From Macrostomum lignano (taxonomy: Eukaryota): 64,000 nucleotides of DNA. Shown here in pieces: positions 6,516 to 60,678 of the stretch. The position numbers and the translations under genes were made by a program. Positions within the stretch are counted from its first letter, which is position 1, and the number at the start of each line of letters is the position of its first letter. Below the pieces are notes generated by a model. That model was not told the DNA's origin. It saw only the letters and a list, made by a program, of their open reading frames with translations, and made no database searches. Where the stretch lies: contig NIVC01002020.1 in the NCBI GenBank assembly GCA_002269645.1, positions 1 to 64,000 on the forward strand, written 5' to 3'.

Positions 6516-11006
<4,491 letters not shown>

Positions 11007-15053: not shown

Positions 15054-18000
15054 ATGGCTCGACGTGGCACCAGCGCATTGAAGAAGAGCAGAGATGCCAA
15101 GAAGAAGCGTCAGCAAGAGAGTGCCGTTCAGCGAGAGGAGCGGCTGGCTGGACTGCGGCAGCAGAAGAATGAGCGAACGGCCATGGAGACTGACGCGCAG
15201 CGAGAAGAGCGGCTGGCTGGACACCGGCAGCAGGAGGCTGAGCGAAGGGCAACGGAAACCGACGCTCAGCGAGAAGAGCGCCTGACGAGACTCCGGCAGG
15301 AAAATGCTGAGCGAAGGGCAATGGAAACCGACGCTCAGCGAGAAGAGCGCCTGACGAGACTCCGGCAGGAAAATGCTGAGCGAAGGGCAACTGAAACCGA
15401 CGCTCAGCGAGAAGAGCGCCTGACGAGACTCCGGCAGGAAAATGCTGAGCGAAGGGCAACGGAAACCGACGCTCAGCGAGAAGAGCGCCTGACGAGACTC
15501 CGGCAGGAAAATGCTGAGCGAAGGGCAACGGAAACAGACGCTCAGCGAGAAGAGCGTAGATCTGGAGACAGAACTCGTGCGGAGAAGCGACGCGCTTCAG
15601 AAACCGAAGAGCAACGAAGAGCTCGAGTGGAAGCCGAGCAAATTCGCCGTCGAGGAGTGTCGGCTGGCAGGTAGGATGACATTTTAATTGGAGCTATATA
15701 TTTTATAGCTATATAAAATCCAAGTGCCCATTGTGCCTAATTCTGGGTATTTTCTATCTTAGCTGATGTTTTATTGGTACTTGGGCATATAATTAAAAAC
15801 TGGAATCTGTTTCGTGCATTTTTCCTAATCTTTTCAGGTCGATTGCTTTCCAAGAATTTTTATTTAAGAGATCAGTATAGAATAGCATAAAATTTATTCG
15901 TCACTACTTTAATAACCGACAAATGAAGTTGTGTATAATTTTTTCCTATATTCCAGGTTTGATAGTAGTGAGTTGGCCACACCGTCTGTGGTACCTTTTG
16001 ATGCGTTGCGCATAATTCGCATTCCTGGTGATGGGAACTGTTTTTTTTATGCAGTCTGTGATCAGTTGCAGGGCACTCCACTTGAGACCGATGCGGCATC
16101 TTTAAGACACGAGCTGACGAGCCGTGTAGTGCAGATTATGCCAGAATTGATTGAACAAGGCTTTGTTTTGCCAGAAAATGCTGATTTCATTGTTGATTCA
16201 TCTTTTTCTGAAGGCACATATGTGCCTGATGAAGTTGTTCCGCTTTTAAGCCGTTGTTTTAATGTTGATCTGGTGATTTATCAAGAAAATGGCACTGTAT
16301 TGCAGTACTGTATGTCCCCTTTGCAGCCACCGATTGCAATCGTCCGAATTCTTTTGCGTCATGAGCATTATGAGTCATTGCGATTTGCTAATCCGATTCC
16401 AGTTTCTGAGCCCATTGTAGATGCAGAGGAGCCAAGATTAACTCAACAGGGTGCAGGTCATTTTGGCGCAAGACCTGCTCAAGAGAGGTAGGTCATTGGT
16501 GTGACTGGTCATCATAATTTATTTGTCATCGAACTCAAGTTGTTTTATTCTAATAATTTTTTTTGTAAACTGAAAGATTAACTGGGAAAACTGTTTGCCA
16601 TTAATCCTTTCTAATCCTAATCCTTCTAATCACAGGCCAGAACGGATAATCAGGCCTGAAGCGCCAGCCCATAACTGTGGCCCAATGGACAGAGCATGCG
16701 ACCAATGCGGTGCATTACTTTGGTGCTCTGAGACGAGGAATTTCTGCTGCGCCAAAGGCAAGGTAAAGCTGCCCAGCCGCACCGTGCCTCAAGTGCTGGC
16801 GGATCTGTACCTGGGGCGGCACAGACTGAGTGCCAAGTTCCTGACCAACATTCGGAGTTACAACTCGGCGCTGCACCTGACATCGCTGGGTGCCAAACTG
16901 CGGTTGGTGCCAGGCTGGTGTCCCAGCTTCATCATCAGCGGCCAGTTGCATCACAACACGGCGCCGCTGTTTGCAGAAGATTCAGCTGAGCCCCATGGCT
17001 GGCAAGTGTATTTCAATGATCGCGAACTTGAAAGCCGCCAGAGTCTCAGCCAGAAGGTGAAGCCGGAACTACTGGAGCTGTTGCAGACGCTGCTTCACGA
17101 ATGCAACGGCTATGTCCGCAGCCTGAGGGCAGTCGCTCATCGAATCAGTCAAGATCCGGAGTTGGGAGATGCGCGAATCGTGATTCACCCTGACCGTCGA
17201 CCATCTGGGGAACACATTCGGTATGTCTGCAAGACATTCTAATAAGATATTTTGCGTAATAAATTATCCAATTATCCAATTATCCAATTTGTACAAACTC
17301 AGTATCCCACAAACTCCGTTCAAAATAAGGCGCTACAACTTGCCTACGGCGAACGAGGTCGGTATCCTGATTGTGGAGGACAATGAGAACACACCGGCCA
17401 GTCGGGACGTGGTGATTCAACTGCGTGGAGGCGGTTCCCAGAGAATCAGCGAGACGCACCGCTCATATGACCCGCTGGAGTATGTGCTGCTGTTCCCGAA
17501 TGGCGAAGATGGCTGGCACCCGGAGTTGCTGATGAGTAATGGCAAGAAATTGACGCCCATGAAATACTATGCGAGCGAAATCATGGTGCGAGCGGGCCAG
17601 TTCAGTGTGCTGCACTATGGCCGAAGATTATTTCAGCAGTACTTGGTGGACATGTGTGCCAAGATTGAGGCAGAGAGGCTGCTGTATTTGCGGACCCATC
17701 AGCAGGACCTGCGCAGCGAGACGTACAGCGGTCTGCGGGACGCTCTGTTTGCAGCTGATGGCAGGTCTACCGACAGAGATCCGAGTGACATAGGCAAGCC
17801 CGCGCATGTGCTTCTGTCTTCGAGCTTCGTTGGCGGGCCAAGGTACCTGATGGAGAGGCTACAGGACGCTATGACCTATGTTCACAAGTTCGGTAAGCCG
17901 GACCTGTTTGTCACCGCAACGTGCAATCCGAAATGGCCGGAGATCAGCGCTCAGCTTCTGCCTGGACAGCGGGCAGAAGACCGGCCCGACATTGTTAGCC

Positions 18001-21000
18001 GAGTCTTTGAAATGAAGAAGAAAGCTCTGCTGGCCCAGTTGACCAAGCGCTATGGGAAAGAGGCCGCTCACGTTTGCTCACTGGAGTACCAGAAGCGTGG
18101 TGAGTAAAAATTCTGACTTGCAAGAATCAAAGTTTTAAGATTTATTAAAATTTAGATTTACAAAGGTTTTGTGATATTTTTTAATACTTTTTTGACGCTC
18201 CAGGTCTTCCTCATGTGCACTTTCTGCTGTGGCTCGTGAGCGGTCAGCGAGTGACTCCGGACCGATACGATGACATCGTGTCTGCCGAGATTCCGGACCC
18301 AGAGCAGCAGCCTGTGCTGTATGAGCTGGTGAAGACGCACATGATCCATGGCCCCTGCGGCAAGGAGAATCCGGCGTGTCCTTGCATGGAGAATGGCGAA
18401 TGCAGCAAGGGCTTTCCGAAAGAGTTCCAGCAGGTGACGCTGACCAGCGATACTGGCTACCCACTGTACCGCAGACTATCGCCTGAGATGGGCGGATTTA
18501 CAGTGGACAAACTGTTCAAAGGCCGGAGCATTCGCATGGACAACAGGGAAGTTCAAACGCTAATATATTGCTTAGTTGTGCATTGCTGCTTTTGTTTCTG
18601 AAAGTTAATGATATTATTTTTTCATTAAAACAGGTGGGTCGTTCCGTACAGCCCTGAACTGTTGCTCCACTTTGCGTGCCACTTGAACGTCGAAGTTTGC
18701 GCCACTGTGAAGTCGGTCAAGTACGTGATCAAGTACCTGTTAAAGGGTGGCGACATGGCGACGTTCAAAGTCGATGCCAATAGGAATTCTACTGAACCGA
18801 GAGAGCAGGCAGTGGGTAACCAGCAGCCGACGCAAACGACACGAAATGAGCCGCGGCGTGATGAGATTAAGGAGTACCTGTCCGCGCGCTACATTGGTCC
18901 AATGGAAGCCGTGAATACCATCTTGGGCTTTGAAGTAATTCGCATTCTAATTATTATTGGCTCATTTTAACCAGAGCTGTGAAACCTCATCATAGTATAA
19001 ATTGAATTTCCATCGAAACTTAAAGGCTGTATATTTTCCTTTCACTTTCTGATCAGGTGCACAACAGGTTTCCGGCGGTCATCCGACTCTGCGTTCACAA
19101 GTCGGAAGAGCAGCTCGTGTATTTCAACGAGGGGACCGCAAGAGCAAAAGCGAGAACGCCGAAGGATTCGACGTTGACGGCATTTTTCAAGCTGTGCCGT
19201 ATTGACGAATTTGCTGGGTCCTTGCTCTACACGGACGTGCCGTCCTACTTCGTGTGGCACTCCAGTGAAAGAGAGTGGCGGCGGGCCAAGCAGGGTGTGC
19301 GAGTCGATGGCCATCCGGGTGTAGTGCGGAACAAAAACGTTGCACGCATGTATACGGTGAGTCCAAGAGCAGGTGATTTATTTTACGTTCGAATGCTCCT
19401 TTTGAATGTTAGGGGACCGACTAGCTTCGAGGCGCTGCAGACCGTGGACGGCGTTGTGCATCCGAGCGCCAAGGCTGCTTGCATGGCCCTTGGCCTGCTG
19501 CAGCGAGATGATCACTGGCGGCGGTGTCTAGCTGAGGCCGTTCAGTCAAGAATGCCAAGAGCCCTGAGACATCTTCTGGCCGTAATTCTCATATGGGGTG
19601 AGCCTGAGGATGGCAGCGACCTCTGGTGCAGTTTTGCCGAGGATCTCAGCGAGGACCTGCGGTTCCACCACCGAGACTTGAGCACCGAGGAGATTACTGA
19701 CCTGGCGCTGCGTGAGCTTCAGAGCATGCTGATCTCCATGGGCGGGAGAAGCCTGCCAGAGTACGGCCTGCCTGCGGCCTCCGTGACACCTCAAGATGGA
19801 CCAATGCAGTTTGATACGGTTGAGCAAGCACTGATTACTGAGGCGCGCTTACCAATGCTGACAGATGAGCAGAAAGCGGTGTACGAGTCCGTGACTCAGA
19901 ATCTTGTGGACGGCACCAGCGGCTTGCACTTCCTGGACGCACCTGCTGGCACTGGCAAGACCTTCCTGCTGGAGGTTCTGCTAGCCTTCGTGCGCAGCCG
20001 GGGTGAAGTCGCTCTCGCCGTTGCGGCTTCTGGAATCGCAGCGACTCTTTTGCCAGGTGGACAGACGGCGCATTCAACGTGAGTAATTTATTGTCAATAT
20101 TTCAAAAAGCAGTTGTAAATATTTCGTGTGCTGTAAATATGTTCGGCATGGTGAAACTATTTGTCTATGCCAGGTTCAAGATACCAATTCGGGCGATCCG
20201 TTCGAGCAAAGACGTGTGCGCTGTTGGAGCGCAGTCCAAACAGGCCGCTTTATTTCGGACAGTGCGTCTAATTGTCTGGGACGAGATTTCTATGACAAAC
20301 CGGAAGGATTTGGAGGCCGTCGACCGGTGCTTGCGAGACGTGCGGAAGCAGGACGTGCCATTCGGCGGAGTGGTTTTCGTTTGCGCTGGGGACTTTCGCC
20401 AGCTGCTGCCCGTTGTGGTGCATGGGACTCGAGCCAACAGCGTCATGGCGTGTGTCAGCAGATCCCCACTGTGGAAATTTTTCCGGCGGCATCGCCTTAC
20501 AAGAAACATCCGATTGCTGAGCAGTTCCGATTCTGCAACGTATTTGAGATACACCGAGCTACTCAAGCAGGTAAGTTTGTTTTCATCAGTTTATTTATTG
20601 GAAGATTTAAGGATGTTCGGTTTCTTTCGTGTTGAGAGCTCCATTTTAAAAAGTGTGGCTTATTCAAGAATGCCTTGCTTAAAGTCTGTCTAGCGTTTTA
20701 AATATTTGACTTTTAACTCCCCCAGATCGGATCCGGAACAATTGAGCAGGATGCAGAGGAGAAAGTGTCTCTTCCTGCTGAGATCATTATTTCTGCGGAG
20801 GCGCCGCTCAATGATCTGATAAATTTTGTGTACCCATCGTTTGAGGCCTCAGTGGAGAGGGACGGCTACTTTGCAAGCCGAGCGATCCTGGCGCCGTACA
20901 ATGACTCAGTGGATGCCATCAACGAGACGTGCCTGGGCATGTTCCCCGGCAGCCTGCGGGAGTACCGCTCAATAGACAGTGTGGCCGATGAGGATGCCGC

Positions 21001-21490
21001 TACGCACTTCCCGCCTGAGTTGCTCAACCAGCTGGATGCCCCGAACTTTCCGATTCACTTGCTGAGGCTAAAAGTGGGTATGCCAGTAGTTCTTCTCAGG
21101 AACATCAACCCGCCACGATTGTGCAATGGTACGCGGCTGATCATACTCGCAATGGGCGAGAACGTGCTTAGATGCAAGATTGCCGCCGGCCAGTTCACGG
21201 GAGACGAGATTCTTCTGCCGCGAATCCCGCTGATTCCTAGCAATGCGGACCTCCCCGTCAGTTTTAAGCGGCTGCAGTTCCCTGTGAAGCCGAGTTTCTG
21301 CCTGACGATTCACAAGTCGCAGGGACAGTCTCTGGACACAGTTGGCATTGACCTGTCAGTCGGTTGCTTCACGCATGGCCAGCTGTACACGGCGCTGTCA
21401 CGAGCAAAGAACGCGGCAAATGTTCGCGTCCGGATTCCGGGAACAAGGACCAGAAACGTTGTGTTTCCAGAAGTTCTCACTGAAGAGTAA
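15054..21490 (+). CDS. Helitron RepHel protein (STPR-like 23-aa repeats, OTU protease, Zn finger, HUH Rep, PIF1 helicase); exons 15054-15670, 15957-16487, 16636-17220, 17330-18099, 18204-18546, 18634-18934, 19057-20078, 20174-20570, 20726-21490; about 1776 aa
   Basis: Rep motifs PDLFVTATCNP, EYQKRGLPHVH, DNRWVVPY and KYVIKYLLKG. PIF1 motifs DAPAGTGKT, IVWDEISM, GDFRQLLPV, TIHKSQGQSL and FTHGQLYTALSR. OTU GDGNC...HY; Zn finger CDQC...CC. All junctions are phase-consistent, but intron 5 needs a GG donor (18547). Confidence 0.9.
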
Positions 21491-22629
21491 TTTATTTATC
21501 GTAAAAAATGAGGGGTGAGCAATAATTTTCCTTATTATTGCAAAAGGCTAGAAAGTATATTCATTTATTTTTAAGGAAAAATAGAATAATTATTTCCCAT
21601 ATCTCTTAAGTAATAGCTCTCATTCTCTAAAATAATAGCTGTCAATAGCTCTCATTCCTAAAAGAATCGCAGGAAATTTATTGCCCCAACCTCATTTCTA
21701 ACGAAGCGTAGATATTGCGTGGCAGTGAGTACGAGCTAATAGCTGATGAACTTTATGTTGAAGCTCAATTAGGCTTATTTTATTCATTGTATAAATTTTT
21801 ACAGTCAATTTGCACTTTACAGTTAATTTGTATTTTAAGGCAATTTCATATTAGCCGAAAGTAACTTTTGAAACAAACCTTCTTTTGCACTGCTTTTAAT
21901 GAATTCAATCTTTGATGAGCAGTTAATTTTGTCTTTTATTTTTCCCCTGAAATTTCATTATAATTTGTGTAAAAACTTTACTTATTTTATATCGCAAATT
22001 TATGCAAAAGACGAAACAATTTTGTTTTTAGTTTTCCAAGGTTCGCAAAAACTTAACATTAGAGTGAATTTTAGTATATGGATTTTTACGCAAACTACGA
22101 GTGACAGTCTTTTTTCAAAAATCTAAAATATCTCAAGTCACCTGTAACAACTGTGGACTGTAAGCTCATAAAAAACGATTTGCATCAACTTGCGACGGGG
22201 CCTTCGTCTTCCATATATTGAAAGTTGAATAATATACGAAACTCACAAGATGTCAATTTTAACTAAGACGAAGGCCCTGAATGAAGCTTTTGTCTTACTT
22301 CATTTCTTAATCTTTGGCGAAACAAATATGAATAGTCTGTGGCAAAGCGCAAAGGCTAAGGAAATAGAGCCAAACTGATTGTTCTGACTATGGATTTGAG
22401 GGCAGGAATGAGCGAATCCGAGGGCTGCGACTATAGACTAACGTAGAGTATTAAAGGAACTCATCTGGTCACATGCAGCCATTGCACACGCTATGTATAC
22501 GTGACATATCGGTTGTACTTTTAATGCCATGTTCATAAGTTTCACTTTGTACTTTTCAAGTTTATTCGCAAAAAAATACAAAAAATTCTTGCGTTACAAA
22601 CGTCAAAAACGTTTAACAAACGTTAAAAA

Positions 22630-23765
22630 TTAAAGAGCCACCATGTCTAACATTAAAGAGCCACCATGCCAAACATCAAAGAGCCACCATGCCAAACATT
22701 AAAGAGCCACCATGTCAAACATAAAAGGACCAACATGTCAAACATTAAAGAGCCACAATGTCAAGCATAAAAGGACCACCATGTCGAACATTAAAGAGCC
22801 ACCATGTCAAAAATTAAAGAGCCACCATGTCAAGCATAAAAGGACCACCATGTCGAGCATTAAAGAGCCACCATGTCTAACATTAAAGAGCCACCATGTC
22901 GAACATTAAAGAGCTACCATTTCAATCATTAAAGAGCCATCATCACATTGAGGTGCCACCAGGTCAAACATTAAAGAGCCACCATGTCAAAAATAAAAAA
23001 GCCACCATGTAGAACATTAAAGAGCCATTATGTCAAACCTAAAAGAGCCACCATGTCAAACATTAAAGAGCCACCATGTCTAACATTAAAGAGCCACCAT
23101 GTCGAACATTAAAGAGCCACCATGTCGAAGATTATAGAGCCACCATGTCGAACATTAAAGAGCCACCATTTCAATCATTAAAGAGCCATCATCACATTGA
23201 GGTGCCACCAGGTCAAACATTAAAGAGCCACCATGTCAAACATAAAAGAGCCACCATGTCCAACATATATGTGACTCCATGTCAAACATTAAAGAGCCAC
23301 CATGTCAAACATTAAAGAGCCACCATGTCAAACATTAAAGAGCCACCATGTCGAACATTAAAGAGCCACCATGTCAAACATTAAAGAGCCACCATGTCGA
23401 ACATTAAAGAGCCATTATGTCAAACCTAAAAGAGCCACCATGTCAAACATTAAAGAGCCACCATGTCGAACATTAAAGAGCCATCATGTCAAACACTAAA
23501 AAGCCACCATGTCAAACATAAAAGATACACAATTTCAAACGTAAAAGTAAGCGTCATGCCAATTTTAAAGGAGCCACTATAGAGCTAAGGAAATTGTTGC
23601 ACTAGCTACTTATTGTCTGGTGGATGCTTACTATTTGGGGATGCTTGCTATCTGGGGGATGCTTGCTATCTGGGGGATGCTTGCTATCTGGGGGATGCTT
23701 GCTATTTGGGGGATGCTTGCTATCTGGGGGATGCTTGCTATCTGGGGGATGCTTGCTGTCTTGGG
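22630..23765. repeat. Helitron 3' subterminal 23-bp array followed by 18-bp array
   Basis: Directly visible tandem repeats. Confidence 0.93.
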
Positions 23766-23876
23766 ATGATTTCTTTTTGCATTACACTTTATTTGAGCAG
23801 TTTGTCTGTTGTCTTTGTCAAGGCTTTATTTGGCTGTCTTTTTGTTACTTGTAGAGAACAGAGATTCTATACAGAT

Positions 23877-23905
23877 GCCCCCCAACGGGGGGCGAAGATT
23901 GCTAG
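23877..23905 (+). other. Helitron 3' termination signal: GC hairpin plus CTAG
   Basis: gcccccc aac ggggggc, then 8 nt, then CTAG. The same signal, with one stem substitution, ends units 3 (39602) and 4 (43251). Confidence 0.9.
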
Positions 23906-24836
23906 TCCTATATACTAAAAATGAAATGCTTGGTTGCTTGCTTGTAATTGATTTTCTCCCGAACGGCTCAACCGATTTTCTTCAAACTTGCACCATTCGA
24001 TCAGAAATTTTCCCGGGACGGTACATGCATATTGGCTAAGAAATTGCTCAATGTTAAAGGGATTAAATATTCGAAAAACATGATTTTTTGCAAAGGTCAA
24101 GCAGCTCTTTCGACCTGAAATGCATTGTAAGAATGCTAGAGAAAAAACTGACTGACTGAATTCCGATTGTGATAAAGATTGCATCACAACAAGTTGAAAA
24201 CAGTGCCGAACAAATGCACACAAAACTTGAATGAAATTGCGTAACCATATTGCCAACTTAAATTGAGACTGATTCTGGCTGACTGAGAAATTGATTATGT
24301 CATAATTTTTTACTCCAATTGACTTGCTGTAAGAATTGAATTATAAGGGCCACAATTCATGTTCTCCAATTGAATCTCTTTTTTAGAAACCCTCTATTTT
24401 TAGCCACGTTAGCCACACGCCGCACTGGCTTCCCAATTACAGTGTACATTTAAGATCTTTTTTGTGTCCTATTATTGAAGTGTGTCGAAAACAGATTGCA
24501 TAACAAGTCGCACCACACTCGACTCTGACACCCCACACAGTGTACATAAAGAAAGAACGTAAAAGCTAAGGCAATCACCAGCCAATCCACAACAAGTAGC
24601 CCAGTGGGTGGATTAGAACAAAACTCTCTCTGATTGGTTAGCCAGATCTAAATTGATCTTTACATGGCACCCTCTATTGGCATGAGTCATCACAGTTAGG
24701 GTTGTCCGAAACGAAATGCTGCAATATAAACTGGCACAATTGGCCTTGATGCTAAAACTATCAAACCACAAACCGTAAAGACCTTATCAGTGAAATTTTT
24801 ATAATCCATATTTTTGGCAACTATCAATCGAGCAAT

Positions 24837-26245
24837 ATGGAGTCAACCGAAGGAGCCAAGAAAAGCAAAGCGTGTATCTCTGCTCTGCTTCCGGGCCTGA
24901 TGCACGCTGCAATCGTTGGCCTCGTAATGAGGCTGTCCAAAATCACGGACTTTGAAGGCAAAAGAGGACCAGGCCAAGTGTTTTCCTTTATCCTCTGTGA
25001 CGACACCGGCGATATACGTGTAAGCGTGTTCGGAAAGGATCTTAAGCCTTTCCTGGAGGTGTGTCGTGAGGGCGTCGCCGTCCGCATATCCGGCGGCTGG
25101 GTGAAGAAGGCGGATCCCAAATACAGCACTACGGACAATGAGCACGAGCTAACAGTTTCAATTGACCAACGTGGAACCATTGTGAGGACCCTCGAGACCG
25201 TCACTCGACGTGCACCAAGCTATAAGAAGATAAAAGAGATTTCGGACTGTGAAATGAAAATGTAAGTTAACTTGTTGCAATTGTTAAAAATAAAATGGAA
25301 AGGATTTGGAATATATATTCCCACTAAATGTTAGGTTAGCCAATTATTTCTAGGGAAACTTATTTAAATCAGTCAGTGAAGTTGCTTAGTGAATGAGTTA
25401 ATGCATTCTTGTAAGTTCACCCTTTGCCTCACATATCTCAGGAATGTTAACGTCTATGGCACGATTTCTGCTGTCCAGAAACCAACGGAAGTTAAAACCG
25501 GTTCCGGAAAACTTATCAACCTGGCGAAAGTGACGCTTGTTGATCAGTCTGGGTCCTCCGTGTCGTGCACATTTTGGGCCAGCTCTACTGCCCAAGTGAA
25601 TGACTGGTCTGTGGGCGACGTTCTAGCGATTCATGGTGCTCAAGTCCAGGAATATTCCCAGACAATCAGTCTCGGATGTTCGAAAGCGGAAATTCAGCAT
25701 TGGCCAGAAGACTCTGCTGATGTCTCCGACATTACCCAGTGGTACAAGGATGCGCTTTCTAGCCAACAGTGCTTCGAGGAGCTACGGGTGACGCAAAGCT
25801 CCCAGCGGGAGAAATATGCTAACCGTGACGACGAAATGGTATTACAGTACCCAGAGCGAATGTTCGACCAATTCGATGAGGTGCGAAGAATTAAAGTGCG
25901 ATTTGGGGACAAAGAGGTAAGTTGATTTTACGAGTATTACGTGTGGGTTAAATAGAAATATGGTGTCAGAGAACGTACTAAAGAAGCAATAAGTGATTGA
26001 CTGCTTAGATTCATTATTAACTTGTTCAATGAGGCCTCTTATCTCTAAAGATTAGGTTTATTCATTCATTCAAGAGTAATATGAATATAAAAAATTGATT
26101 AAATTCATATATAAATTTCATTTCACAGGTGACATTTTCCCGAGATCATATCAACAGAAGTCAGCAGATCCCCGCTATGTCAACCCCTAAGGCTCCCAAT
26201 GTGTCCGAGAAGCCTGGGCCATCACATGATTTCATGGACGAGTAG
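24837..26245 (+). CDS. RPA70-like ssDNA-binding protein with two OB folds (DBD-A/DBD-B like); exons 24837-25261, 25442-25916, 26129-26245; 338 aa
   Basis: ISALLPG..KRGPGQVFSFILCDDTGDIRVSVFG..KADPKYSTTDNEHEL and VNVYG..LVDQSGSSVSCTFWA..VLAIHGAQV..WY parallel RPA1 ([64 protein letters not shown]..WF). Canonical GT-AG introns, phases consistent, no stops. Confidence 0.85.
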
Positions 26246-26479
26246 GACTTGAAAGACTAATAAAGATGCAATTAACGTGAGTAATGCTTGAGTGCATTTT
26301 TGTCTGCCAGTAGCGCATCTGAGTTCGATAGCCATCACAAGTAGTTTAACCTGATATGTATAATACGGCCCGATGAGACGTATCAGGTAAATCTTGCTTT
26401 ATTCACCTAATAAATTAAAATTAGATGGGATCATAATGGAATTGGGATCAGTGATTAGCTAAGCAAAATGATTAGCTAA

Positions 26480-27720
26480 ATTGTGTTCATTGCATAACAG
26501 AACTGAGATCATTGCTTAGCGAAATTGGGTTCATTGCATAACAGAACTGAGATCATTGCTTAGTTAAATTGGGTTTATGGCATTACAGAACTGAGAGCAT
26601 TGCTTAGCTAAATTGGGTTCATTGCTTGTTCATTGGGTTCACAGAATCTCTTAGATCCCAATCCTAAATTCACAGAATCTCTTAGATCCCAATCCTAAAT
26701 TCATAGAATCTCTTAGATCCCAATCCTAAATTCATGGGATCTCTTAGATCCCAATCCTAAATTCACAGAATCTCTTAGATCCCAATCCTAAATTCATAGA
26801 ATCTCTTAGATCCCAATGCTAAATTCTTATAATCTCTTAGATCCCAATCCTAAATTCACAGAATCTCTTAGATCCCAATGCTAAATTCACAGAATCTATT
26901 AGATTCCAATCCTAAATTCATAGAATCTCTTAAATCCCAATCCTAAATTCATAGAATCTCTTAGATCCCAATCCTAAATTCATAGAATCTCTTAGATCCC
27001 AATCCTAAATTCACAGAATCTTATATATCAATCCTAAATCATTGCTTAGCTAAATTGTGTTTGTGGCATAACGGAAGTGAGATCATTGCTTAGCTAAATT
27101 GTGTTTGTGGCATAACAGAAGTGAGATCATTGCTTAGCCTAATTGGGTTCATTGCATAACAGAACTAAGATCATTGCTTAGCGTAATTGGGATCATTTGG
27201 CATAACTAAGTTGGGATCCTTGCATACTAAATTGGGATCATAGCAAACCAGAATTGGAATTATCGCATAATGAAATTGGGCTCATGGCATGATACGAATG
27301 GGATCATTGAAGAATGGAAAATTGGATTCATAGTTTACCAGAATTATGATTAGTAAGAGGGGCGTCCGTAAGGTAATGAAAATTTTCTGCTACGAGTTGG
27401 GATCAAGGCAAACCAGAATAGGATCGGATTGGGTTCCCAATAGCCAATTGGGTTCCCAACCCAATAGCTAAATTGTGTTTGTGGCATAACAGAAGTGAGA
27501 TCATTGCTTAGCTAAATTGTGTTTGTGGCATAACAGAAGTGAGATCATTGCTTAGCCTAATTGGGTTCATTGCATAACAGAACTAAGATCATTGCTTAGC
27601 GTAATTGGGATCATTTGGCGTAACTAAAATGGGATTATTGCATAACAAAATTGAGATCCTTTCATAACTAGATTGAGATCATTGCATAACTAGATTGGGA
27701 TCAAGGCAAACCAGAATAGG
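26480..27720. repeat. Unit 2 internal repeats: about 37-bp cataacagaactgagatcattgcttagctaaattggg units flanking a 31-bp agaatctcttagatcccaatcctaaattcac array (26643-27030)
   Basis: Directly visible. Confidence 0.88.
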
Positions 27721-27953
27721 ATCGGATACAATCGGATCCCAATTTAGTTGTGCCATGAAAGTTAATAAGTAATAGTGAAATTAATGTAGGTAAATATTAG
27801 GTGAATATATAGCAGGTTGGCTGCATATCAATGGGCCTTGAGATTGTGGTTGAAATAACGTGTTCGCTGCTTTTTCACGATTCAGAGGTTCTTCCACTCT
27901 AAAACTGAGGGTATGCAGCCATGAGAGAGAGGTTTGAAGCAGCTTCAGCAAAC

Positions 27954-28253
27954 CTAGAGACTTGTGATAGCTAAGCTTTTTGTGTGACGTTGAGTGCGTG
28001 AACTTAACTTGCCCCAGTGAATGCCTCTGACCAGCAGTGCAGAGTAAAGCAAGCCAACAAGCAGTAGGATTGACACCATTATTCTTGCAGTCAAATGCAA
28101 TGAACTGTGCAATGATACTGTCTTGTTGGCGGAGCCTTCTGCAAGTGCATCATGTTTACTGTTTGTGGGTAATATTTTTAGGTGCAATGCAATTTTTTCT
28201 TTTTTCATTGAACTGAATCCCATTACTGTCCCATTACTGTCGTTTTCTGACAT
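27954..28253 (-). CDS. Hypothetical 99-aa ORF with one hydrophobic segment, in unit 2 cargo
   Basis: ATG-initiated non-repetitive ORF with the segment IMVSILLLVGLLYSALLV; no family recognised. Confidence 0.25.
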   Translation of the reverse strand: MSENDSNGTVMGFSSMKKEKIALHLKILPTNSKHDALAEGSANKTVSLHSSLHLTARIMVSILLLVGLLYSALLVRGIHWGKLSSRTQRHTKSLAITSL

Positions 28254-29506
28254 TACTCAGTAGTCACAACTTGTTTCTGTCGAAAAAATAATTTAACAAA
28301 CGAAAGAGGAAAATCGCTGAATTCTCTACATTTGGAGTTTGTTTTCTTATAATGTCATAATGATATGTATTTGTATAATAATAATTTTGCCAGATGCTCA
28401 CTCAATTGTTGTTGTTTTGTTGTTTTCAATGTGTTTTGCAATTAAAGAAATACAAAAAATGTTTCAGTGGACAAAGACCAGTCCCATGATTCATGAATCT
28501 GCACACCTGGTACCTGCCTTATTCTATTTTAAAAGATAAATTGTCAGGCTTGCATTTATAATGAAGAATGATACAAAATGGATTACTAAGAAAAGAGGTC
28601 AGATGAGAAATAGGATCTGATCAGAACTGGAATCATTAAGAAAAAGAAAGGAGATTAGAAATTGATCCATTGATATTTAATTAGCCATTGATATGAGCTA
28701 ACCATTTTGAACTATCAAAATGGATCTAATTTGAAATAGACTTTTATGTCATATAGGATTTGATTCAAAATAAGATTTGACAATGTGAATGAGGCATATA
28801 AGAAAAGAGAAGTCTGCTGAGGAGTGTGACTAGAAAAGAAAGGGGGAATTTAGCATGATAATATATATCATATATCATGCCTATATATAGCCAATGTTAG
28901 CTTTATTAAAAGTGTCAAACCAAAGGTCGAAGGATGTAGCTCCAGTTGCTTTTGCAAAGTCCATTCACAATGAGATAGCTGCATTGAACTGACTCTTTAA
29001 GTCATTTATTATAATAAGAGGGGCCTCATTCAAGGGCAATAGTTGCAATGCTGAGCTACTTATTGTTCGGAACATTGCAGTCGCAGTTAGTACGATGAGC
29101 AGGGCTAAGAAATTCACTTACAAATGAAGAAAGTAAAAAATTTCTCGGGATGTGTATAAAACTGTAGTACACATGAGCAATACAAGCAACAAGAAAATCG
29201 GAATAAAGCAAGTCATTTCTCGGAAAGTCGCAATTTCTTGGACTATTATTTAATTTATTTTCAGTAACAACTAAAAAAGTGATCTCAACAGTTTTATAAA
29301 CTAAATAAATAAAATAATTTTTATCAAACACGTTGACATATACAGGGCTCTAAACTAAAAAACTGTAAAAAGTTGATAGTTTTGTTTTACCTAAAATGCG
29401 TTATTAACGATCTCCAAAAATTCCTATTTTAAGCTTAAGCTTAAGAAAGACACTTAAAGTACTCCTGCTAAAAGGTATATTATATTAGACGAATATTAAT
29501 TATTTC

Positions 29507-29538
29507 TGCTCCCCGAAGGGGGGCAAAACTTTAGCTAG
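29507..29538 (+). other. Alternative Helitron 3' termination signal of unit 2
   Basis: tgctcccc gaa ggggggca hairpin, then CTAG at 29535-29538 joined directly to the TC of unit 3. Confidence 0.85.
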
Positions 29539-30819
29539 TCCTATATACTAAAAATGAGTTGTCTGTATGTGGGTAGGTATGCGATAGATTTCAGAAAAAA
29601 TGGCTCAACCGATTTTCTTCAAACTTGCACCATTCGATCAGAAATTTTCCTGGGACGGTACATGCATCTTGGCTAAGAAATTGCTCAATTTTAAAGGGAT
29701 TAAATATTCGAAAAACATGCTTTTTTGCAAAGGTCAAGCAGCTCTTTCGACCTGAAATGCATTGTAAAAATGCTAGAGAAAAAACTGACTGACTGAATTC
29801 TGATTGTGATAAAGATTGCATAACAGCTGAATTGTACCTCCGCCTTGAATTGCGTCACAGTGTTGAAAACACTGTGTAGAAGCATATTACGAGACTTGAT
29901 TTAGACTGCGTAACCATACTGACCGATTGAAAAATTGATTATGTCATAACTGCTTCGTGCTCATCTTATAGTGTAATTTTTGTTAAACATAAAAGAAGCG
30001 TCATGAAAAACCTAAAAAATGCTAGCGTCGAGGCTTACTAATTCAGAACCACAAGTGTCATAAAAATCGTAAAAGAAGTGTCATTTTAAGCATGAAAAGT
30101 TCCTGTAAAGCATAGAAGAAGCGCGAATATTCGAATAACACACATGCCTTTCTGCAAGGGTCAAGCAGAACTTCCTACTGTGAGCCATTCTGATTGGAAT
30201 TAAACTTTGCAGCGCCCAGTAAAGTAGTATTTTTTGTCGCCAGGCTAGAGAACTATAAATGTACACTGCGAGAAAAGATTGTACATTATAAAATCTTCCC
30301 GTGCACAATTGACATACTAACTTTAAATGCTGGAGAGAGGGAGAGTGAGAGAGTGAAATACATGCACATATATACAGTATCTAATTGATTCACAATATAC
30401 GAACCATGTTTGAGACTGACCCTCCAAAATGTAATAAAACCGTCTGATTATAAAAAAGTCCAAAAGTGCCACAGAGATAGATGTACATTGGCTACTGAGG
30501 CTTGCGCCTCCTTCAGAAAATTTATCTGAATCCTTTCACATAGGAGAGTTAGAGTTAGGTGTTTGAGAGAGAGTATTGAATAATAAAAAGAGTCCTGACC
30601 AATTAGCAGGCGGGTATTGGAGAGAATTTAGGCTTGCTGTACACACTGACAGTCTAACAGTGTACAAATGGTGTCCAGCTTTTTGGGATTGGGTGGTTGC
30701 TGAGTTTAAAACGCGTGACATTATAGACTTCATACCTTTCTCTTTTCTCGCACACAACCCCTACTATCCTTTCTTTTCATTATAACTCAAAATTCTTATC
30801 TTTCAATTTGAATTCCAAT

Positions 30820-33800
30820 ATGGCTCGACGTGGCACCAGCGCATTGAAGAAGAGCAGAGATGCCAAGAAGAAGCGTCAGCAAGAGAGTGCCGTTGAGCGA
30901 GAGGAGCGGCTGGCTGGACTGCGGCAGCAGAAGAATGAGCGAACGGCCATGGAGACTGACGCGCAGCGAGAAGAGCGGTTGGCTGGACTGCGGCAGCAGA
31001 AGGCTGAGCGAACGGCCATGGAGACTGACGCGCAGCGAGAAGAGCGGCTGGCTGGACACCGGCAGCAGGAGGCTGAGCGAAGGGCAACTGAAACCGACGC
31101 TCAGCGAGAAGAGCGCCTGACGAGACTCCGGCAGGAAAATGCTGAGCGAAGGGCAACGGAAACAGACGCTCAGCGAGAAGAGCGTAGATCTGGAGACAGA
31201 ACTCGTGCGGAGAAGCGACGCGCTTCAGAAACCGAAGAGCAACGAAGAGCTCGAGTGGAAGCCGAGCAAATTCGCCGTCGAGGAGTGTCGGCTGGCAGGT
31301 AGGATGACATTTTAATTGGAGCTATATATTTTATAGCTATATAAAATCCAAGTGCCCTTTGTGCCTAATTCGGGGTATTTTCTATCTTAGCTGATGTTTT
31401 ATTGGTACTTGGGCATATAATTAAAAACTGGAATCTGTTTCGTGCATTTTTTCTCCTCTTTTCAAGTCGATTGCTTTCCAAGAGTTTTATTTAAGAGATC
31501 AGTATAGAATAGCATAAAATTTATTCGTCACTACTTTAATTACCGGCAAATGAAGTTGTGTATAATTTTTTTCCTATATTCCAGGTTTGATAGTAGTGAG
31601 TTGGCCACACCGTCTGTGGTACCTTTTGATGCGTTGCGCATAATTCGCATTCCTGGTGATGGGAACTGTTTTTTTTATGCAGTCTGTGATCAGTTGCAGG
31701 GCACTCCACTTGAGACCGATGCGGCATCTTTAAGACACGAGCTGACGAGCCGTGTAGTGCAGATTATGCCAGAATTGATTGAACAAGGCTTTGTTTTGCC
31801 AGAAAATGCTGATTTCATTGTTGATTCCTCTTTTTCTGAAGGCACATATGTGCCTGATGAAGTTGTTCCGCTTTTAAGCCGTTGTTTTAATGTTGATCTG
31901 GTGATTTATCAAGAAAACGGCACTGTACTGCAGTACTGTATGTCCCCTTTGCAGCCACCGATTGCAATCGTCCGAATTCTTTTGCGTCATGAGCATTATG
32001 AGTCATTGCGATTTGCTAATCCGATTCCAGTTTCTGAGCCCATTGTAGATGCAGAGGAGCCAAGATTAACTCAGCAGAGTGCATGTCATTTTGGCGCAAG
32101 ACCTGCTCAAGAGAGGTAGGTCATTGGTGTGACTGGTCATCATAATTTATTTGTCATCGAACTCAAGTTGTTTTATTCCAATAAATTTTTTTGTAAGCTG
32201 AAAGATTAACTGGGAAAACTGTTTGCCATTAATCCTTCCTAATCCTAATCCTTCTAATCACAGGCCAGAACGGATTATCAGGCCTGAAGCGCCAGCCCAT
32301 AACTGTGGCCCAATGGACAGAGCATGCGACCAATGCGGTGCATTACTTTGGTGCTCTGAGACGAGGAATTTCTGCTGCGCCAAAGGCAAGGTGAAGCTGC
32401 CCAGCCGCACCGTGCCTCAAGTGCTGGCAGATCTGTACCTGGGGCGGCACAGAATGAGTGCCGAGTTCCTGACCAACATTCGGAGTTACAACTCGGCGCT
32501 GCACCTGACATCGCTGGGTGCCAAACTGCGGTTGGTGCCAGGCTGGTGTCCCAGCTTCATCATCAGCGGCCAGTTGCATCACAACACGGCGCCGCTGTTT
32601 GCAGAAGATTCAGCTGAGCCCCATGGCTGGCAGGTGTATTTCAATGATCGCGAACTTGAAAGCCGCCAGAGTCTCAGCCAGAAGGTGAAGCCGGAGCTAC
32701 TGGAGCTATTGCAGACGCTGCTTCACGAGTGCAACGGCTATGTCCGCAGCCTGAGGGCAGTCGCTCATCGAATCAGTCAAGATCCGGAGTTGGGAGATGC
32801 GCGAATCGTAATTCACCCTGACCGTCGACCATCTGGGGAACACATTCGGTATGTCTGCAAGACATTCTAATAAGATATTTTGCGTAATAAATTATCCAAT
32901 TATCCAATTATCCAATTTGTACAAACTCAGTATCCCACAAACTCCGTTCAAAATAAGGCGCTACAACTTGCCTACGGCGAACGAGGTCGGTATCCTGATT
33001 GTGGAGGACAATGAGAACACACCGGCCAGTCGGGACGTGGTGATTCAACTGCGTGGAGGCGGTTCCCAGAGAATCAGCGAGACGCACCGCTCATATGACC
33101 CGCTGGAGTATGTGCTGCTGTTCCCGAATGGCGAAGATGGCTGGCACCCGGAGTTGCTGATGAGTAATGGCAAGAAATTAACGCCCATGAAATACTATGC
33201 GAGCGAAATCATGGTGCGAGCGGGCCAGTTCAGTGTACTGCACTATGGCCGAAGATTATTTCAGCAGTACTTGGTGGACATGTGTGCCAAGATTGAGGCA
33301 GAGAGGCTGCTGTATTTGCGGACCCATCAGCAGGACCTGCGCAGCGAGACATACAGCGGTCTGCGGGACGCTCTGTTTGCAGCTGATGGCAGGTCTACCG
33401 ACAGAGATCCGAGTGACATAGGCAAGCCCGCGCATGTGCTTCTGTCTTCGAGCTTCGTTGGCGGGCCAAGGTACCTGATGGAGAGGCTACAGGACGCTAT
33501 GACCTATGTTCACAAGTTCGGTAAGCCGGACCTGTTTGTCACCGCAACGTGCAATCCGAAATGGCCGGAGATCAGCGCTCAGCTGCTGCCTGGACAGCGG
33601 GCAGAAGACCGGCCGGACATTGTTAGCCGAGTCTTTGAAATGAAGAGGAAAGCTCTTCTGGCCCAGTTGACCAAGCGCTATGGGAAAGAGGCCGCTCACG
33701 TTTGCTCACTGGAGTACCAGAAGCGTGGTGAGTAAAAATTCTGACTTGCAAGAATCAAAGTTTTAAGATTTATTAAAATTTAGATTTACAAAGGTTTTGT

Positions 33801-36800
33801 GATATTTTTTAATACTTTTTTGACGCTCCAGGTCTTCCCATGTGCACTTTCTGCTGTGGCTCATGAGCGGTCAGCGAGTGACTCCGGACCGATACGATGA
33901 CATCGTGTCTGCCGAGATTCCGGACCCAGAGCAGCAGCCTGTGCTGTATGAGTTGGTGAAGACGCACATGATCCATGGCCCCTGCGGCAAGGAGAATCCG
34001 GCGTGTCCTTGCATGGAGAATGGCGAATGCAGCAAGGGCTTTCCGAAAGAGTTCCAGCAGGTGACGCTGACCAGCGATACTGGCTACCCACTGTACCGCA
34101 GACTATCGCCTGAGATGGGCGGATTTACAGTGGACAAACTGTTCAAAGGCCGGAGCATTCGCATGGACAACAGGGAAGTTCAAACGCTAATATATTGCTT
34201 AGTTGTGCATTGCAGCTTTTGTTTCTGAAAGTTAATGATATTATTTTTTCATTAAAACAGGTGGGTCGTTCCGTACAGCCCTGACCTGTTGCTCCAGTTT
34301 GCGTGCCACTTGAACGTCGAAGTTTGCGCCACTGTGAAGTCGGTCAAGTACGTGATCAAGTACCTGTTAAAGGGTGGCGACATGGCGACGTTCAAAGTCG
34401 ATGCCAATAGGAATTCTACTGAACCGAGAGAGCAGGCAGTGGGTGACCAGCAGCCGACGCAAACGACAGGAAATAAGCCGCGTGATGAGATTAAAGAGTA
34501 CCTGTCCGCGCGCTACATTGGTCCAATGGAAGCCGTGAATACCATCTTGGGCTTTGAAGTAATTCGCATTCTAATTATTATTGGCTCATTTTAACCAGAG
34601 CTGTGAAACCTCGTCATAGTATAAATTGAATTTCCATCGAAACTTAAAGGCTGTATATTTTCCTTCCACTTTCTGATCAGGTGCACAACAGGTTTCCGGC
34701 GGTCATCCGACTCTGCGTTCACAAGTCGGAAGAGCAGCTCGTGTATTTCAACGAGGGGACCGCAAGAGCAAAAGCGAGAACGCCGAAGGATTCGACGTTG
34801 ACGGCATTTTTCAAGCTGTGCCGTATTGACGAATTTGCTGGGTCCTTGCTCTACACGGAGGTGCCGTCCTACTTTGTGTGGCTCTCCAGCGAAAGAGAGT
34901 GGCGGCGGGCCAAGCAGGGTGTGCGAGTCGATGGCCATCCGGGTGTAGTGCGGAACAAAAACGTTGCACGCATGTATACGGTGAGTCCAAGAGCAGGTGA
35001 TCTATTTTACGTTCGAATGCTCCTTTTGAATGTTAGGGGACCGACTAGCTTCGAGGCGCTGCAGACCGTGGACGGCGTTGTGCATCCGAGCGCCAAGGCT
35101 GCTTGCATGGCCCTTGGCCTGCTGCAGCGAGATGATCACTGGCGGCGGTGTCTAGCTGAGGCCGTTCAGTCAAGAATGCCAAGAGCCCTGAGACATCTTC
35201 TGGCCGTAATTCTCATATGGGGTGAGCCTGAGGATGGCAGCGACCTCTGGTGCAGTTTTGCCGAGGATCTCAGCGAGGACCTGCGGTTCCACCACCGAGA
35301 CTTGAGCACCGAGGAGATTACTGACCTGGCGCTGCGTGAGCTTCAGAGCATGCTGATCTCCATGGGCGGGAGAAGCCTGCCAGAGTACGGCCTGCCTGCG
35401 GCCTCCGTGACACCTCAAGATGGACCAATGCAGTTTGATACGGTTGAGCAAGCACTGATTACTGAGGCGCGCTTACCAATGCTGACAGATGAGCAGAAAG
35501 CGGTGTACGAGTCCGTGACTCGGAATCTTGTGGACGGCACCAGCGGCTTGCACTTCCTGGACGCACCTGCTGGCACTGGCAAGACCTTCCTGCTAGAGGT
35601 TCTGCTAGCCTTCGTGCGCAGCCGGGGTGAAGTCGCCCTCGCCGTTGCGGCTTCTGGAATCGCAGCGACTCTTTTGCCAGGTGGACAGACGGCGCATTCA
35701 ACGTGAGTAATTTATTGTCAATATTTCAAAAAGCAGTTGTAAATATTTCGTGTGCTGTAAATATGTTAGGCATGGTGAAACTATTTTCTATGCCAGGTTC
35801 AAGATACCAATTCGGGCGATCCGTTCGAGCAAAGACGTGTGCGCTGTTGGAGCGCAGTCCAAACAGGCCGCTGTATTTCGGACAGTGCGTCTAATTGTCT
35901 GGGACGAGATTTCTATGACAAACCGGAAGGATTTGGAGGCCGTCGACCGGTGCTTGCGAGACGTGCGGAAGCAGGACGTGCCATTCGGCGGAGTGGTTTT
36001 CGTTTGCGCTGGGGACTTTCGCCAGCTGCTGCCCGTTGTGGTGCATGGGACTCGAGCCAACAGCGTCATGGCGTGTGTCAGCAGATCCCCACTGTGGAAA
36101 TTTTTCCGGCGGCATCGCCTTACAAGAAACATCCGATTGCTGAGCAGTTCCGATTCTGCAACGTATTTGAGATACACCGAGCTACTCAAGCAGGTAAGTT
36201 TGTTTTCATCAGTTTATTTATTGGAAGATTTAAGGATATTCGGTTTCTTTCGTGTTGAGAGCTCCATTTTAAAAATTGTGGCTTATTCAAGAATGCCTTG
36301 CTTAAAGTCTGTCTAGCGTTTTAAATATTTGACTTTTAACTCCCCCAGATCGGATCCGGAACAATTGACCAGGATGCAGAGGAGAAAGTGTCTCTTCCTG
36401 CTGAGATCATCATTTCTGCGGAGGCGCCGCTCAATGATCTGATAAATTTTGTGTACCCATCGTTTGAGGCGTCAGTGGAGAGGGACGGCTACTTTGCAAG
36501 CCGAGCGATCCTGGCGCCGTACAATGACTCAGTGGATGCCATCAACGAGACGTGCCTGGGCATGTTCCCCGGCAGCCTGCGGGAGTACCGCTCAATAGAC
36601 AGTGTGGCCGATGAGGATGCCGCTACGCACTTCCCGCCTGAGTTGCTCAACCAGCTGGATGCCCCGAACTTTCCGATTCACTTGCTGAGGCTAAAAGTGG
36701 GTATGCCAGTAGTTCTTCTCAGGAACATCAACCCGCCACGATTGTGCAATGGTACGCGGCTCATCATACTCGCAATGGGCGAGAACGTGCTTAGATGCAA

Positions 36801-60073: not shown

Positions 60074-60678
<605 letters not shown>

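What the first reader, a model, noticed from the sequence alone, without database searches (positions are those of the whole stretch)
23906..29538. Candidate bipartite Helitron system: a separate companion element encoding only an RPA70-like ssDNA-binding protein
Seen: unit 2 has the family 5' end, no Rep or helicase, an intact 3-exon 338-aa gene with two RPA70-like OB folds, and its own 3' terminus. It sits between two RepHel elements that lack any RPA gene. The protein lacks the N-terminal and C-terminal Zn-containing domains of host RPA1 and is very divergent, so it does not look like a recent capture of the host gene. Known: some Helitrons, notably in plants, carry RPA70-like genes in cis within the autonomous element, and rolling-circle transposition produces ssDNA. 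Inferred: the machinery here is split over two co-mobilised segments, the SSB segment depending on RepHel and possibly supplying SSB in return, like a segmented replicon or helper-satellite pair. I do not know of this being described, but cannot check the literature.
Basis: partly seen in the sequence, partly recalled or inferred. Interest (0 to 1): 0.9.

Follow-up and report, generated by a model that had tools for sequence, protein, structure and literature searches.

The report
RPA-only Helitron unit in a flatworm array
This is a real, recently mobile flatworm Helitron that has lost its transposase and kept only a single-strand-DNA-binding gene, a "semi-autonomous" kind already described in rice, so it is a good new example, not a new two-part transposon system.

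Summary
Window 23906-29538 is a discrete 5.6-kb Helitron unit. It has the family 5' end, its own hairpin+CTAG 3' end, no Rep/helicase remnant, and an intact 3-exon, 338-aa gene with RPA70 DBD-A/B folds. It lies head-to-tail between two RepHel units that lack any RPA gene. The DNA is Macrostomum lignano.

The "bipartite system" reading is only partly supported.
- In favour: a second, 99.9%-identical copy of the unit's 3' end abuts a different RepHel unit on another contig. The unit therefore moves on its own and lands exactly at 5' ends of resident elements. The RPA gene family is under purifying selection.
- Against: the same RepHel lineage (98-99% identical) carries an RPA paralog in cis in four other copies. 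Two sister families have RepHel followed by RPA inside one element. RPA-only units arise repeatedly by internal deletion.
- Already published: head-to-tail G|T junctions, and an RPA-only "semi-autonomous" Helitron (rice Mothra, 2015).

Most likely it is a deletion-derived, trans-mobilised Helitron that still supplies an accessory ssDNA-binding protein. No genome-wide census or expression data could be obtained.

The parts
13349..23905 (+). Unit 1: putatively autonomous family-A Helitron. It carries an STPR repeat ORF, an OTU-like ORF, Helitron_like_N/Rep and a PIF1 helicase (15042-21490), then 23-bp and 18-bp satellites and a 3' hairpin CCCCCCAACGGGGGG..CTAG. It has no RPA gene. Host A precedes its 5' TC.
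23906..29538 (+). Unit 2: the RPA-only, RepHel-less Helitron unit (the finding).
23906..24374 (+). 5' terminal region of unit 2 (TC start). It is 93.5% identical to the unit 1 5' region from nt 57 on. Nt 30-60 resemble sister family B.
24837..25261 (+). RPA-like gene exon 1 (ATG; DBD-A; phase-2 donor GTAAGT).
25442..25916 (+). RPA-like gene exon 2 (DBD-B and conserved tail). It is 475 nt, the same length as in paralog P0001.
26129..26245 (+). RPA-like gene exon 3 and TAG stop. AATAAA follows at 26259-26264.
26472..27703 (.). Internal tandem repeats of unit 2 (44-bp and 31-bp units).
29511..29538 (+). 3' terminus of unit 2: hairpin CCCC-GAA-GGGGGG, an 11-nt spacer, then CTAG. This hairpin type is shared with the RPA-proximal 3' ends of sister families B and C, not with units 1, 3 and 4.
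29539..39602 (+). Unit 3: second family-A RepHel unit, 96.5% identical to unit 1. All coding blocks are colinear at 98-99.7% aa identity. It has no RPA gene.
39603..43251 (+). Unit 4: short non-coding family-A derivative with about 118 copies of the 23-bp satellite. Its 3' CTAG is followed by host T.

Best explanation
Unit 2 is a non-autonomous ('semi-autonomous') canonical Helitron (HLE1) of Macrostomum lignano. It descends from an ancestor organised as 5' end - RepHel - RPA - 3' hairpin/CTAG. It lost the RepHel region by internal deletion and kept the accessory RPA70-like gene (DBD-A/B plus a lineage-specific tail) and that gene's 3' terminus.

Inferred mechanism:
1. RepHel supplied in trans by family-A elements such as units 1 and 3 nicks at the unit's 5' TC.
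2. The helicase unwinds 5' to 3' as far as the hairpin/CTAG.
3. The single-stranded or circular copy is integrated.

In this genome, integration very often happens exactly at the 5' T of a resident Helitron. This builds mixed head-to-tail arrays with CTAG|TC junctions. The window array is such a pile-up, most likely built by successive insertions. The RPA-like protein most likely coats the single-stranded intermediate and acts in trans for any element, including RPA-less RepHel units.

Shown here: the anatomy, a second copy in a different context, cis arrangements in relatives, and purifying selection. Inferred: trans-mobilisation by family-A RepHel, ssDNA coating, and targeting of resident 5' ends.
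For: Ends and lack of RepHel.

Intact gene with RPA70 A/B folds. F65, Y96, W187 and Y213 align with aromatic residues of human RPA70 DBD-A/B and are invariant in the family. From memory these are the ssDNA-stacking residues F238, F269, W361 and F386.

Ancestral cis order: family B elements L002, L013 and L014 are single A/T..CTAG-bounded elements with OTU-to-helicase blocks followed by RPA, about 0.6 kb before a CCCCGAAGGGGGG..CTAG end. Family C locus L009 has a helicase C-terminal remnant about 250 bp upstream of its RPA and the same GAA-loop hairpin. Unit 2 shares that hairpin.

Recurrent deletion: L003-5, L010 and L011 have three different deletions of family B that keep RPA. L011 stands alone between host A and T.

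Independent mobility: the unit 2 3' end is 99.9% identical in L001, but the downstream units differ. The same downstream unit type has another left neighbour in L008.

Separate insertions in the array: unit 1 versus unit 3 RepHel shows 27 synonymous and 15 non-synonymous changes, dN/dS 0.17, p=3e-8 against neutrality.

Selection on RPA: dN/dS 0.15-0.28.

Precedents: Mothra mother element; G|T head-to-tail junctions and the 'insert at host A | resident T' model; Helraiser circles and read-through; RPA downstream of RepHel, and OTU and STPR domains, in HLE1.
Against: - No autonomous element carrying the unit-2-type RPA (over 90% identical) in cis was found, so the deletion origin is inferred from sister families only.
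- Only two copies of unit 2 could be seen, and the second only over its last 851 bp. Its upstream neighbour and ORF state are unknown.
- Unit 2 was never seen alone between host A and T.
- There are no expression, splicing or protein data.
- The unit 2 3' hairpin differs from that of the presumed helper family (AAC loop versus GAA loop), so mobilisation by family-A RepHel is an assumption.
- Array shuffling by recombination or gene conversion, instead of transposition, is not excluded.
Confidence: 0.7

Rival explanations
1. One reading: an obligate two-segment Helitron. RepHel-only units and the RPA-only unit depend on each other and are kept together and co-mobilised, like a segmented replicon or a helper-satellite pair.
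For: - In the window both RepHel units lack RPA and unit 2 lacks RepHel.
- In both places where it was seen, unit 2 sits directly next to family-A RepHel units.
- The RPA gene is conserved and intact.
Against: - RepHel 98-99% identical to units 1 and 3 has an RPA paralog in cis in four copies.
- Sister families are cis.
- The downstream partner of unit 2 differs between its two copies, and one of those partners already has its own RPA.
- Units 1 and 3 are separate insertions.
- From general knowledge: many active Helitrons, including Helraiser, have no RPA, so RepHel need not depend on it.
Confidence: 0.1
2. Units 1 and 2 are really one composite element (RepHel followed by RPA, as in the sister families) with an internal 3'|5' junction. 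It is moved as a whole when the first 3' hairpin is read through.
For: - The order RepHel then RPA matches L002, L013 and L014.
- The whole array has a single host A ... T pair of flanks.
- Read-through of the 3' end occurs in about 12% of Helraiser events.
Against: - Unit 2 has a complete 470-bp family 5' region, not just a junction.
- Unit-1-type 3' ends occur next to other units without unit 2 (L008).
- Heterogeneous head-to-tail junctions are everywhere in this genome, which fits serial insertion.
- The upstream side of the second unit 2 copy could not be read, so this is not excluded.
Confidence: 0.13
3. The gene is a captured host RPA1 fragment (ordinary Helitron gene capture) with no role in transposition, or a decaying pseudogene.
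For: Helitrons often capture host gene fragments. The protein has only the A and B domains of RPA70.
Against: - About 20-24% identity to canonical RPA70-like proteins and 21-24% to solved RPA70 structures, with no closer cellular relative among 1.8 billion representatives.
- A monophyletic Macrostomum clade with at least five sublineages, all linked to Helitron termini.
- Conserved intron position and phase, and a conserved private C-terminal tail.
- dN/dS 0.15-0.28.
- ORF intact with canonical splice sites.
- The host RPA1 of M. lignano itself was not identified, so the comparison with it is indirect.
Confidence: 0.03

Closest known systems
Rice DHH_Mothra 'mother element' (Roffler, Menardo & Wicker 2015, Mob DNA, PMC4683698)
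   Same: [quoted passage not shown]
- Proposed to rely on a related RepHel-encoding family.
- Contains tandem-repeat blocks.
- Called 'semi-autonomous' and derived by loss of RepHel from a RepHel+RPA ancestor.
   Different: - Plant versus flatworm.
- Mothra RPA is 472 aa with 8 exons, from the plant-specific PHRPA clade. Here it is 338 aa with 3 exons, from a Macrostomum-specific clade.
- The Mothra helper family always carries RPA too. Here some helper-lineage copies lack it.
- Here the unit sits in precise head-to-tail arrays, and a second near-identical copy shows recent movement.
RPA-like second ORFs of Helitrons and Helentrons (plant Helitrons; mite Helentron-Mo-1A, 358 aa, DBD-A+B only, PMC4067079; HELIANO survey PMC11417382)
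   Same: - A protein limited to RPA70 DBD-A and DBD-B.
- In HLE1 it lies downstream of RepHel, as in sister families B and C here.
- Presumed to bind the single-stranded intermediate.
   Different: In those elements the gene is in cis with RepHel. In unit 2 it is the only gene. The C-terminal tail (about residues 225-307) has no match outside Macrostomum.
Head-to-tail Helitron pairs and arrays (Myotis, Pritham & Feschotte 2007 as cited in PMC2267711; maize AF466202, PMC2267711)
   Same: CTAG of one element is joined directly to TC of the next (a G|T junction) with no host base. In maize the two neighbours are unlike each other, and this was explained by insertion at host A | resident T.
   Different: Here there are four units in one array, and such junctions occur at most sampled loci, between different families and between coding and non-coding units.
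Helper-satellite pairs and multipartite ssDNA replicons
   Same: One unit lacks the initiator/helicase and must be acted on in trans through shared terminal signals. It may contribute a useful protein.
   Different: There is no evidence that the RepHel partner needs the RPA unit, no fixed pairing, and cis versions of the same lineage coexist.

Membership tests
Canonical Helitron (HLE1), non-autonomous element | 5' terminus starting TC and homologous to the 5' end of a RepHel-encoding family | tested here: met
   The first 19 nt are identical to units 3 and 4. 93.5% identity over 413 bp with unit 1.
Canonical Helitron (HLE1), non-autonomous element | 3' terminus CTRR preceded by a short GC-rich hairpin | tested here: met
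   CCCC-GAA-GGGGGG, 11 nt, then CTAG at 29511-29538.
Canonical Helitron (HLE1), non-autonomous element | Insertion between host A and T without target-site duplication | tested here: inconclusive
   Both ends of unit 2 abut other Helitron ends (G|T junctions). Only the four-unit array as a whole lies between host A (13348) and T (43252). A related RPA-only unit (L011) does lie between host A and T.
Canonical Helitron (HLE1), non-autonomous element | No Rep/helicase coding capacity | tested here: met
   tblastn of nine RepHel blocks against unit 2 gives a best E of 0.35.
Canonical Helitron (HLE1), non-autonomous element | More than one copy, with the same termini in different genomic contexts | tested here: met
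   A second copy of the last 851 bp (99.9% identical) ends at the same CTAG in contig NIVC01004209.1, next to a different unit. Only the 3' part of that copy could be read.
Helitron-encoded RPA-like protein | RPA70 DBD-A and DBD-B OB folds with ssDNA-contacting aromatic residues | tested here: met
   Pfam; 1jmc at 2e-13; AF2 plus Foldseek at 1e-18. F65, Y96, W187 and Y213 align with aromatic residues of human RPA70 and are invariant in the family. Their identity as the ssDNA-stacking F238, F269, W361 and F386 is from memory.
Helitron-encoded RPA-like protein | Gene located within an element that also encodes RepHel | tested here: not met
   Not so in unit 2. It is so in relatives L002, L013, L014 (sense) and L001, L006, L008, L012 (antisense).
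'Semi-autonomous' RPA-only Helitron (Mothra mother type) | Intact RPA gene, no RepHel, and termini related to a RepHel family whose members carry a homologous RPA | tested here: met
   Intact ORF. The 5' end is shared with family A. Family-A copies with a cis RPA paralog at 63% aa identity. The 3' hairpin is of the sister-family type.
'Semi-autonomous' RPA-only Helitron (Mothra mother type) | The RPA protein contributes to transposition | not testable with these tools
   The only evidence is indirect: dN/dS 0.15-0.28 between lineages.
   RepHel 98-99% identical to units 1 and 3 has RPA in cis in four copies.
   Unit 2 is next to RepHel units in 2 of 2 copies, but the partners differ. Units 1 and 3 are separate insertions. 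No census was possible.

The most novel reading that the evidence does not exclude
RPA-less RepHel units and the RepHel-less RPA unit form a real division of labour. It would be held together physically because the transposase integrates incoming copies at the 5' TC of resident relatives. Mixed head-to-tail arrays would then act as self-assembling multi-gene Helitron 'operons', whose sub-sets can be re-mobilised by 3'-end read-through.
Probability: 0.12. Interest if true: 0.7.

Novelty: new member of a known kind. Interest (0 to 1): 0.35.

Why it matters
This is a clean animal example of a Helitron that keeps only the accessory single-strand-binding gene. Within one genome there is a full series: RepHel+RPA in cis (sense or antisense), RepHel only, RPA only, and non-coding units. 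That makes M. lignano, a transgenic-tractable flatworm, a good place to test what Helitron RPA proteins do. That question has been open since Helitrons were described.

The precise stacking of unlike units at each other's 5' ends also bears on how Helitron arrays form: by targeted integration at a resident 5' end, or by rolling-circle concatemers. It does not reveal a new class of mobile element.

Tried and rejected
- **RepHel protein search.** Searching the protein database with RepHel ORFs, to sample RepHel loci and reach the rest of contig NIVC01004209.1, timed out twice.
- **642-aa gene model.** I reconstructed the 642-aa gene model of L001 by splice-site enumeration, which gave 70 models. 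The second unit 2 copy could therefore be read only over 851 bp.
- **Exon-1 ORF look-up.** The 142-aa ORF is not on record. The unit-2-type RPA is absent from the protein collection, so no census or transcript evidence could be obtained.
- **First AlphaFold run.** A 3-sequence alignment gave an unusable model (pLDDT 38). It was replaced by a 36-sequence alignment.
- **P0016.** The top hit of the representative search looked like a trematode relative. It is a 26-fold tandem RPA fragment at 22% identity merged into one gene model, and not a close relative.
- **Flank comparison.** I looked for nucleotide similarity between the RPA gene flanks of the four lineages. Only the terminal ~30 bp (hairpin+CTAG) aligns.
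- **Rejected readings.** Host-gene capture and pseudogene. A single rolling-circle concatemer as the origin of the array.

Full report
**What is in the window.**
- The family 5' end, taken with its preceding junction (CTAGTCCTATATACTAAAAATGA), occurs four times on the + strand, with none expected by chance. The 5' ends are at 13349, 23906, 29539 and 39603.
- Hairpin+CTAG 3' ends lie at 23905, 29538, 39602 and 43251.
- These define four head-to-tail units. The three internal junctions read CTAG|TC with no host base. The array as a whole lies between host A (...cacattaA|TC) and host T (CTAG|Tttgag).
- Units 1 (13349-23905) and 3 (29539-39602) are 96.5% identical over 8.3 kb. Both carry an STPR-repeat ORF, a weakly OTU-like ORF, Helitron_like_N and PIF1 helicase blocks. 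All blocks are colinear and 98-99.7% identical in protein.
- Unit 4 (39603-43251) is a non-coding derivative made mostly of a 23-bp satellite.

**Unit 2.**
- Its first 19 nt equal those of units 3 and 4. Positions 57-469 are 93.5% identical to unit 1.
- Its 3' end is CCCC-GAA-GGGGGG, 11 nt, then CTAG.
- It has no trace of Rep or helicase coding sequence (best tblastn E 0.35).
- It holds the only RPA-like sequence in the 64 kb.
- The three-exon model (24837-25261, 25442-25916, 26129-26245) has canonical GT..AG introns and gives 338 aa. AATAAA follows 14 nt after the stop.
- Evidence for the fold: Pfam finds two OB domains; the best solved relative is human RPA70 DBD-A/B (1jmc, 2e-13, residues 14-219); an AlphaFold model from a 36-sequence alignment has pLDDT 84.8 with two OB folds; its best structural matches are RPA70 A/B structures at about 1e-18.
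- F65, Y96, W187 and Y213 align with aromatic residues of human RPA70 and are invariant in the family. From memory these are F238, F269, W361 and F386, which stack on ssDNA.
- There is no N-terminal OB and no DBD-C or zinc domain.

**Source and relatives.**
- The nearest proteins are all from Macrostomum lignano.
- A stretch of contig NIVC01004209.1 (locus L001) is 99.9% identical to the last 851 bp of unit 2. The window is therefore M. lignano DNA.
- An exhaustive profile search of 1.8 billion representatives finds close relatives only in Macrostomum. There are at least five sublineages at 36-66% aa identity to the unit 2 protein. After them come metagenomic proteins at about 27% and ordinary ~600-aa RPA70s.
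- In a neighbour-joining tree the Macrostomum proteins form one clade apart from all the RPA70-like hits that were included.
- The first intron has the same position and phase in three lineages. The second exon is 475 nt in two of them.
- dN/dS is 0.15 against P0001 and 0.28 against P0002, with synonymous sites saturated.
- This is an old, selected, transposon-borne gene family and not a recent host capture. I could not identify the host RPA1 explicitly, so that comparison is indirect.

**How the gene is arranged in related elements** (14 loci).
- *Family B* (5' TCTAATATACTAAAGTTGA; 3' CCCCGAAGGGGGGTCAACTATTGCTAG): L002, L013 and L014 are single 8.3-8.5-kb elements. OTU-to-helicase blocks are followed about 550 bp later by the RPA gene and about 600 bp later by the 3' end.
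- *Family B derivatives*: L003/4/5, L010 and L011 are the same family with three different internal deletions. These remove part or all of RepHel and keep RPA. L011 stands alone between host A and T.
- *Family C* (L009): a helicase C-terminal remnant lies about 250 bp upstream of its RPA, with a GAA-loop hairpin at the 3' end.
- *Family A with cis RPA*: L001, L006, L008 and L012 carry a 14.4-kb unit whose RepHel is 98-99% identical to window units 1 and 3. Its 3' part holds an RPA paralog (P0001 type, 63% aa to unit 2) in antisense orientation.
- RPA in cis is therefore the common state, even for the RepHel lineage present in the window, and RPA-only units arise repeatedly.
- The unit 2 3' hairpin is the type found next to RPA genes in families B and C, not the type of units 1, 3 and 4. 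This fits descent from a RepHel-then-RPA ancestor by loss of RepHel.
- These loci were found through their RPA proteins, so retention of RPA in them is partly an ascertainment effect.

**Is unit 2 mobile by itself, and how did the array form?**
- Across the junction, the last 300 bp of unit 2 differ at one position between the window and L001. The downstream units differ clearly: unit 3 versus the 14.4-kb unit, with indels and about 92% identity.
- That same 14.4-kb unit has a different left neighbour in L008.
- The simplest reading is at least two recent insertions of unit 2, each landing exactly on the 5' T of a resident family-A element.
- Units 1 and 3 differ by 27 synonymous and 15 non-synonymous changes (dN/dS 0.17, p=3e-8 against neutrality). 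They diverged as active lineages and were inserted separately. This argues against one rolling-circle concatemer or an in-place duplication.
- Head-to-tail junctions between unlike units are common in the sampled loci.
- The literature already reports such G|T junctions in bats and maize. It explains them by canonical insertion between host A and the T of a resident 5' TC (PMC2267711).
- Helraiser work shows circle junctions and about 12% read-through of the 3' end (PMC4778049). Composite mobilisation of neighbouring units therefore remains possible.

**Comparison with what is known.**
- An RPA-only, RepHel-less Helitron with proper ends was described in rice as the Mothra 'mother element'. 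It was proposed to be 'semi-autonomous' and to depend on a sister family (PMC4683698).
- RPA proteins limited to DBD-A/B are known from animal Helentrons (PMC4067079).
- HELIANO reports RPA downstream of RepHel in HLE1, and OTU and STPR domains in HLE1 variants (PMC11417382).
- Unit 2 meets the tested features of a non-autonomous HLE1 Helitron and of the Mothra-type semi-autonomous class.
- It fails the key feature of an obligate bipartite system, because cis versions of the same RepHel lineage exist.

**Verdict.**
- Best explanation (about 0.7): a deletion-derived, trans-mobilised Helitron that still expresses an accessory ssDNA-binding protein, stacked with other units by insertion at resident 5' ends.
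- Rivals: a composite unit 1+2 element (about 0.13), an obligate bipartite system (about 0.1), host capture or pseudogene (about 0.03).

**Limits.**
- No genome-wide census was possible.
- The second copy was seen over only 851 bp.
- There are no expression data.
- The RepHel gene models were not verified.

Noticed in passing
window 23905/23906, 29538/29539, 39602/39603; L001 6417/6418, 20797/20798; L008 234/235, 14600/14601; L003 2829, 4957, 6801; L010 1849, 5523, 7656; L009 11768; L014 11713: Precise CTAG|TC head-to-tail junctions between unlike Helitron units (different families, coding and non-coding) occur at most sampled M. lignano loci. This suggests frequent integration exactly at the 5' end of resident elements.
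   Followed up: partly
L007 10001-53241 (Calicophoron daubneyi CAXVIE010000190.1): 26 tandem copies of a ~1.47-kb unit, each containing an RPA70 DBD-A/B fragment, are annotated as one 4022-aa protein (P0016). It is only 22% identical to the unit 2 protein. It may be a satellite built from an RPA gene fragment.
   Followed up: partly
L001 6418-20797 (- strand); also L006, L008, L012: A 14.4-kb family-A unit carries an antisense RPA paralog, a poly-Q-rich ORF region (L001 ~8480-8960) and a 21-bp satellite (12800-13460) between the helicase and the 3' end. L001 and L008 share a ~1.17-kb helicase deletion. Whether the RPA segment is a nested reverse-oriented Helitron was not resolved.
   Followed up: partly
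window 13941-14230, 22625-23547, 38263-39280, 40193-42896: The 23-bp satellite AAACATTAAAGAGCCACCATGTC inside family-A units varies from 12 to 118 copies between units. An 18-bp repeat (TCTGGGGGATGCTTGCTA) always lies just before the 3' end. The 69-bp STPR coding repeat has 6.2 copies in unit 1 and 4.2 in unit 3.
   Followed up: no
L013 3246, L014 3449, L011 11714: Two full-length family B elements have T and not A before their 5' TC. L011 has CCAG in place of CTAG at its 3' end.
   Followed up: no
window 8684-9424 (+) and 61164-62642 (+): Host-type genes flank the repeat-rich region: a Kelch-repeat ORF and a rhodopsin-family GPCR ORF (Pfam 7tm_1, 1.7e-52).
   Followed up: no
window 6773-7153, 7766-8548, 10013-10651, 11092-12321, 49121-50135, 50398-50960, 51346-55986, 56618-57638, 58238-59387, 60074-60678: There are many unrelated satellite arrays outside the Helitron array. 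The 10013-10651 array recurs at 60074-60678 (about 93%). The largest is a 4.6-kb array of a 31-bp unit.
   Followed up: no
unit 2 protein residues ~225-307 (window 25695-25916 and 26129-26150): A C-terminal tail is conserved only among Macrostomum Helitron RPAs (W..A.SSQQ.FE...TQ...MF..F...R..G..E..FSRD). It is modelled as a helix (234-248) and then a helix plus beta-hairpin (280-304, moderate confidence). It is a candidate contact surface for RepHel.
   Followed up: partly
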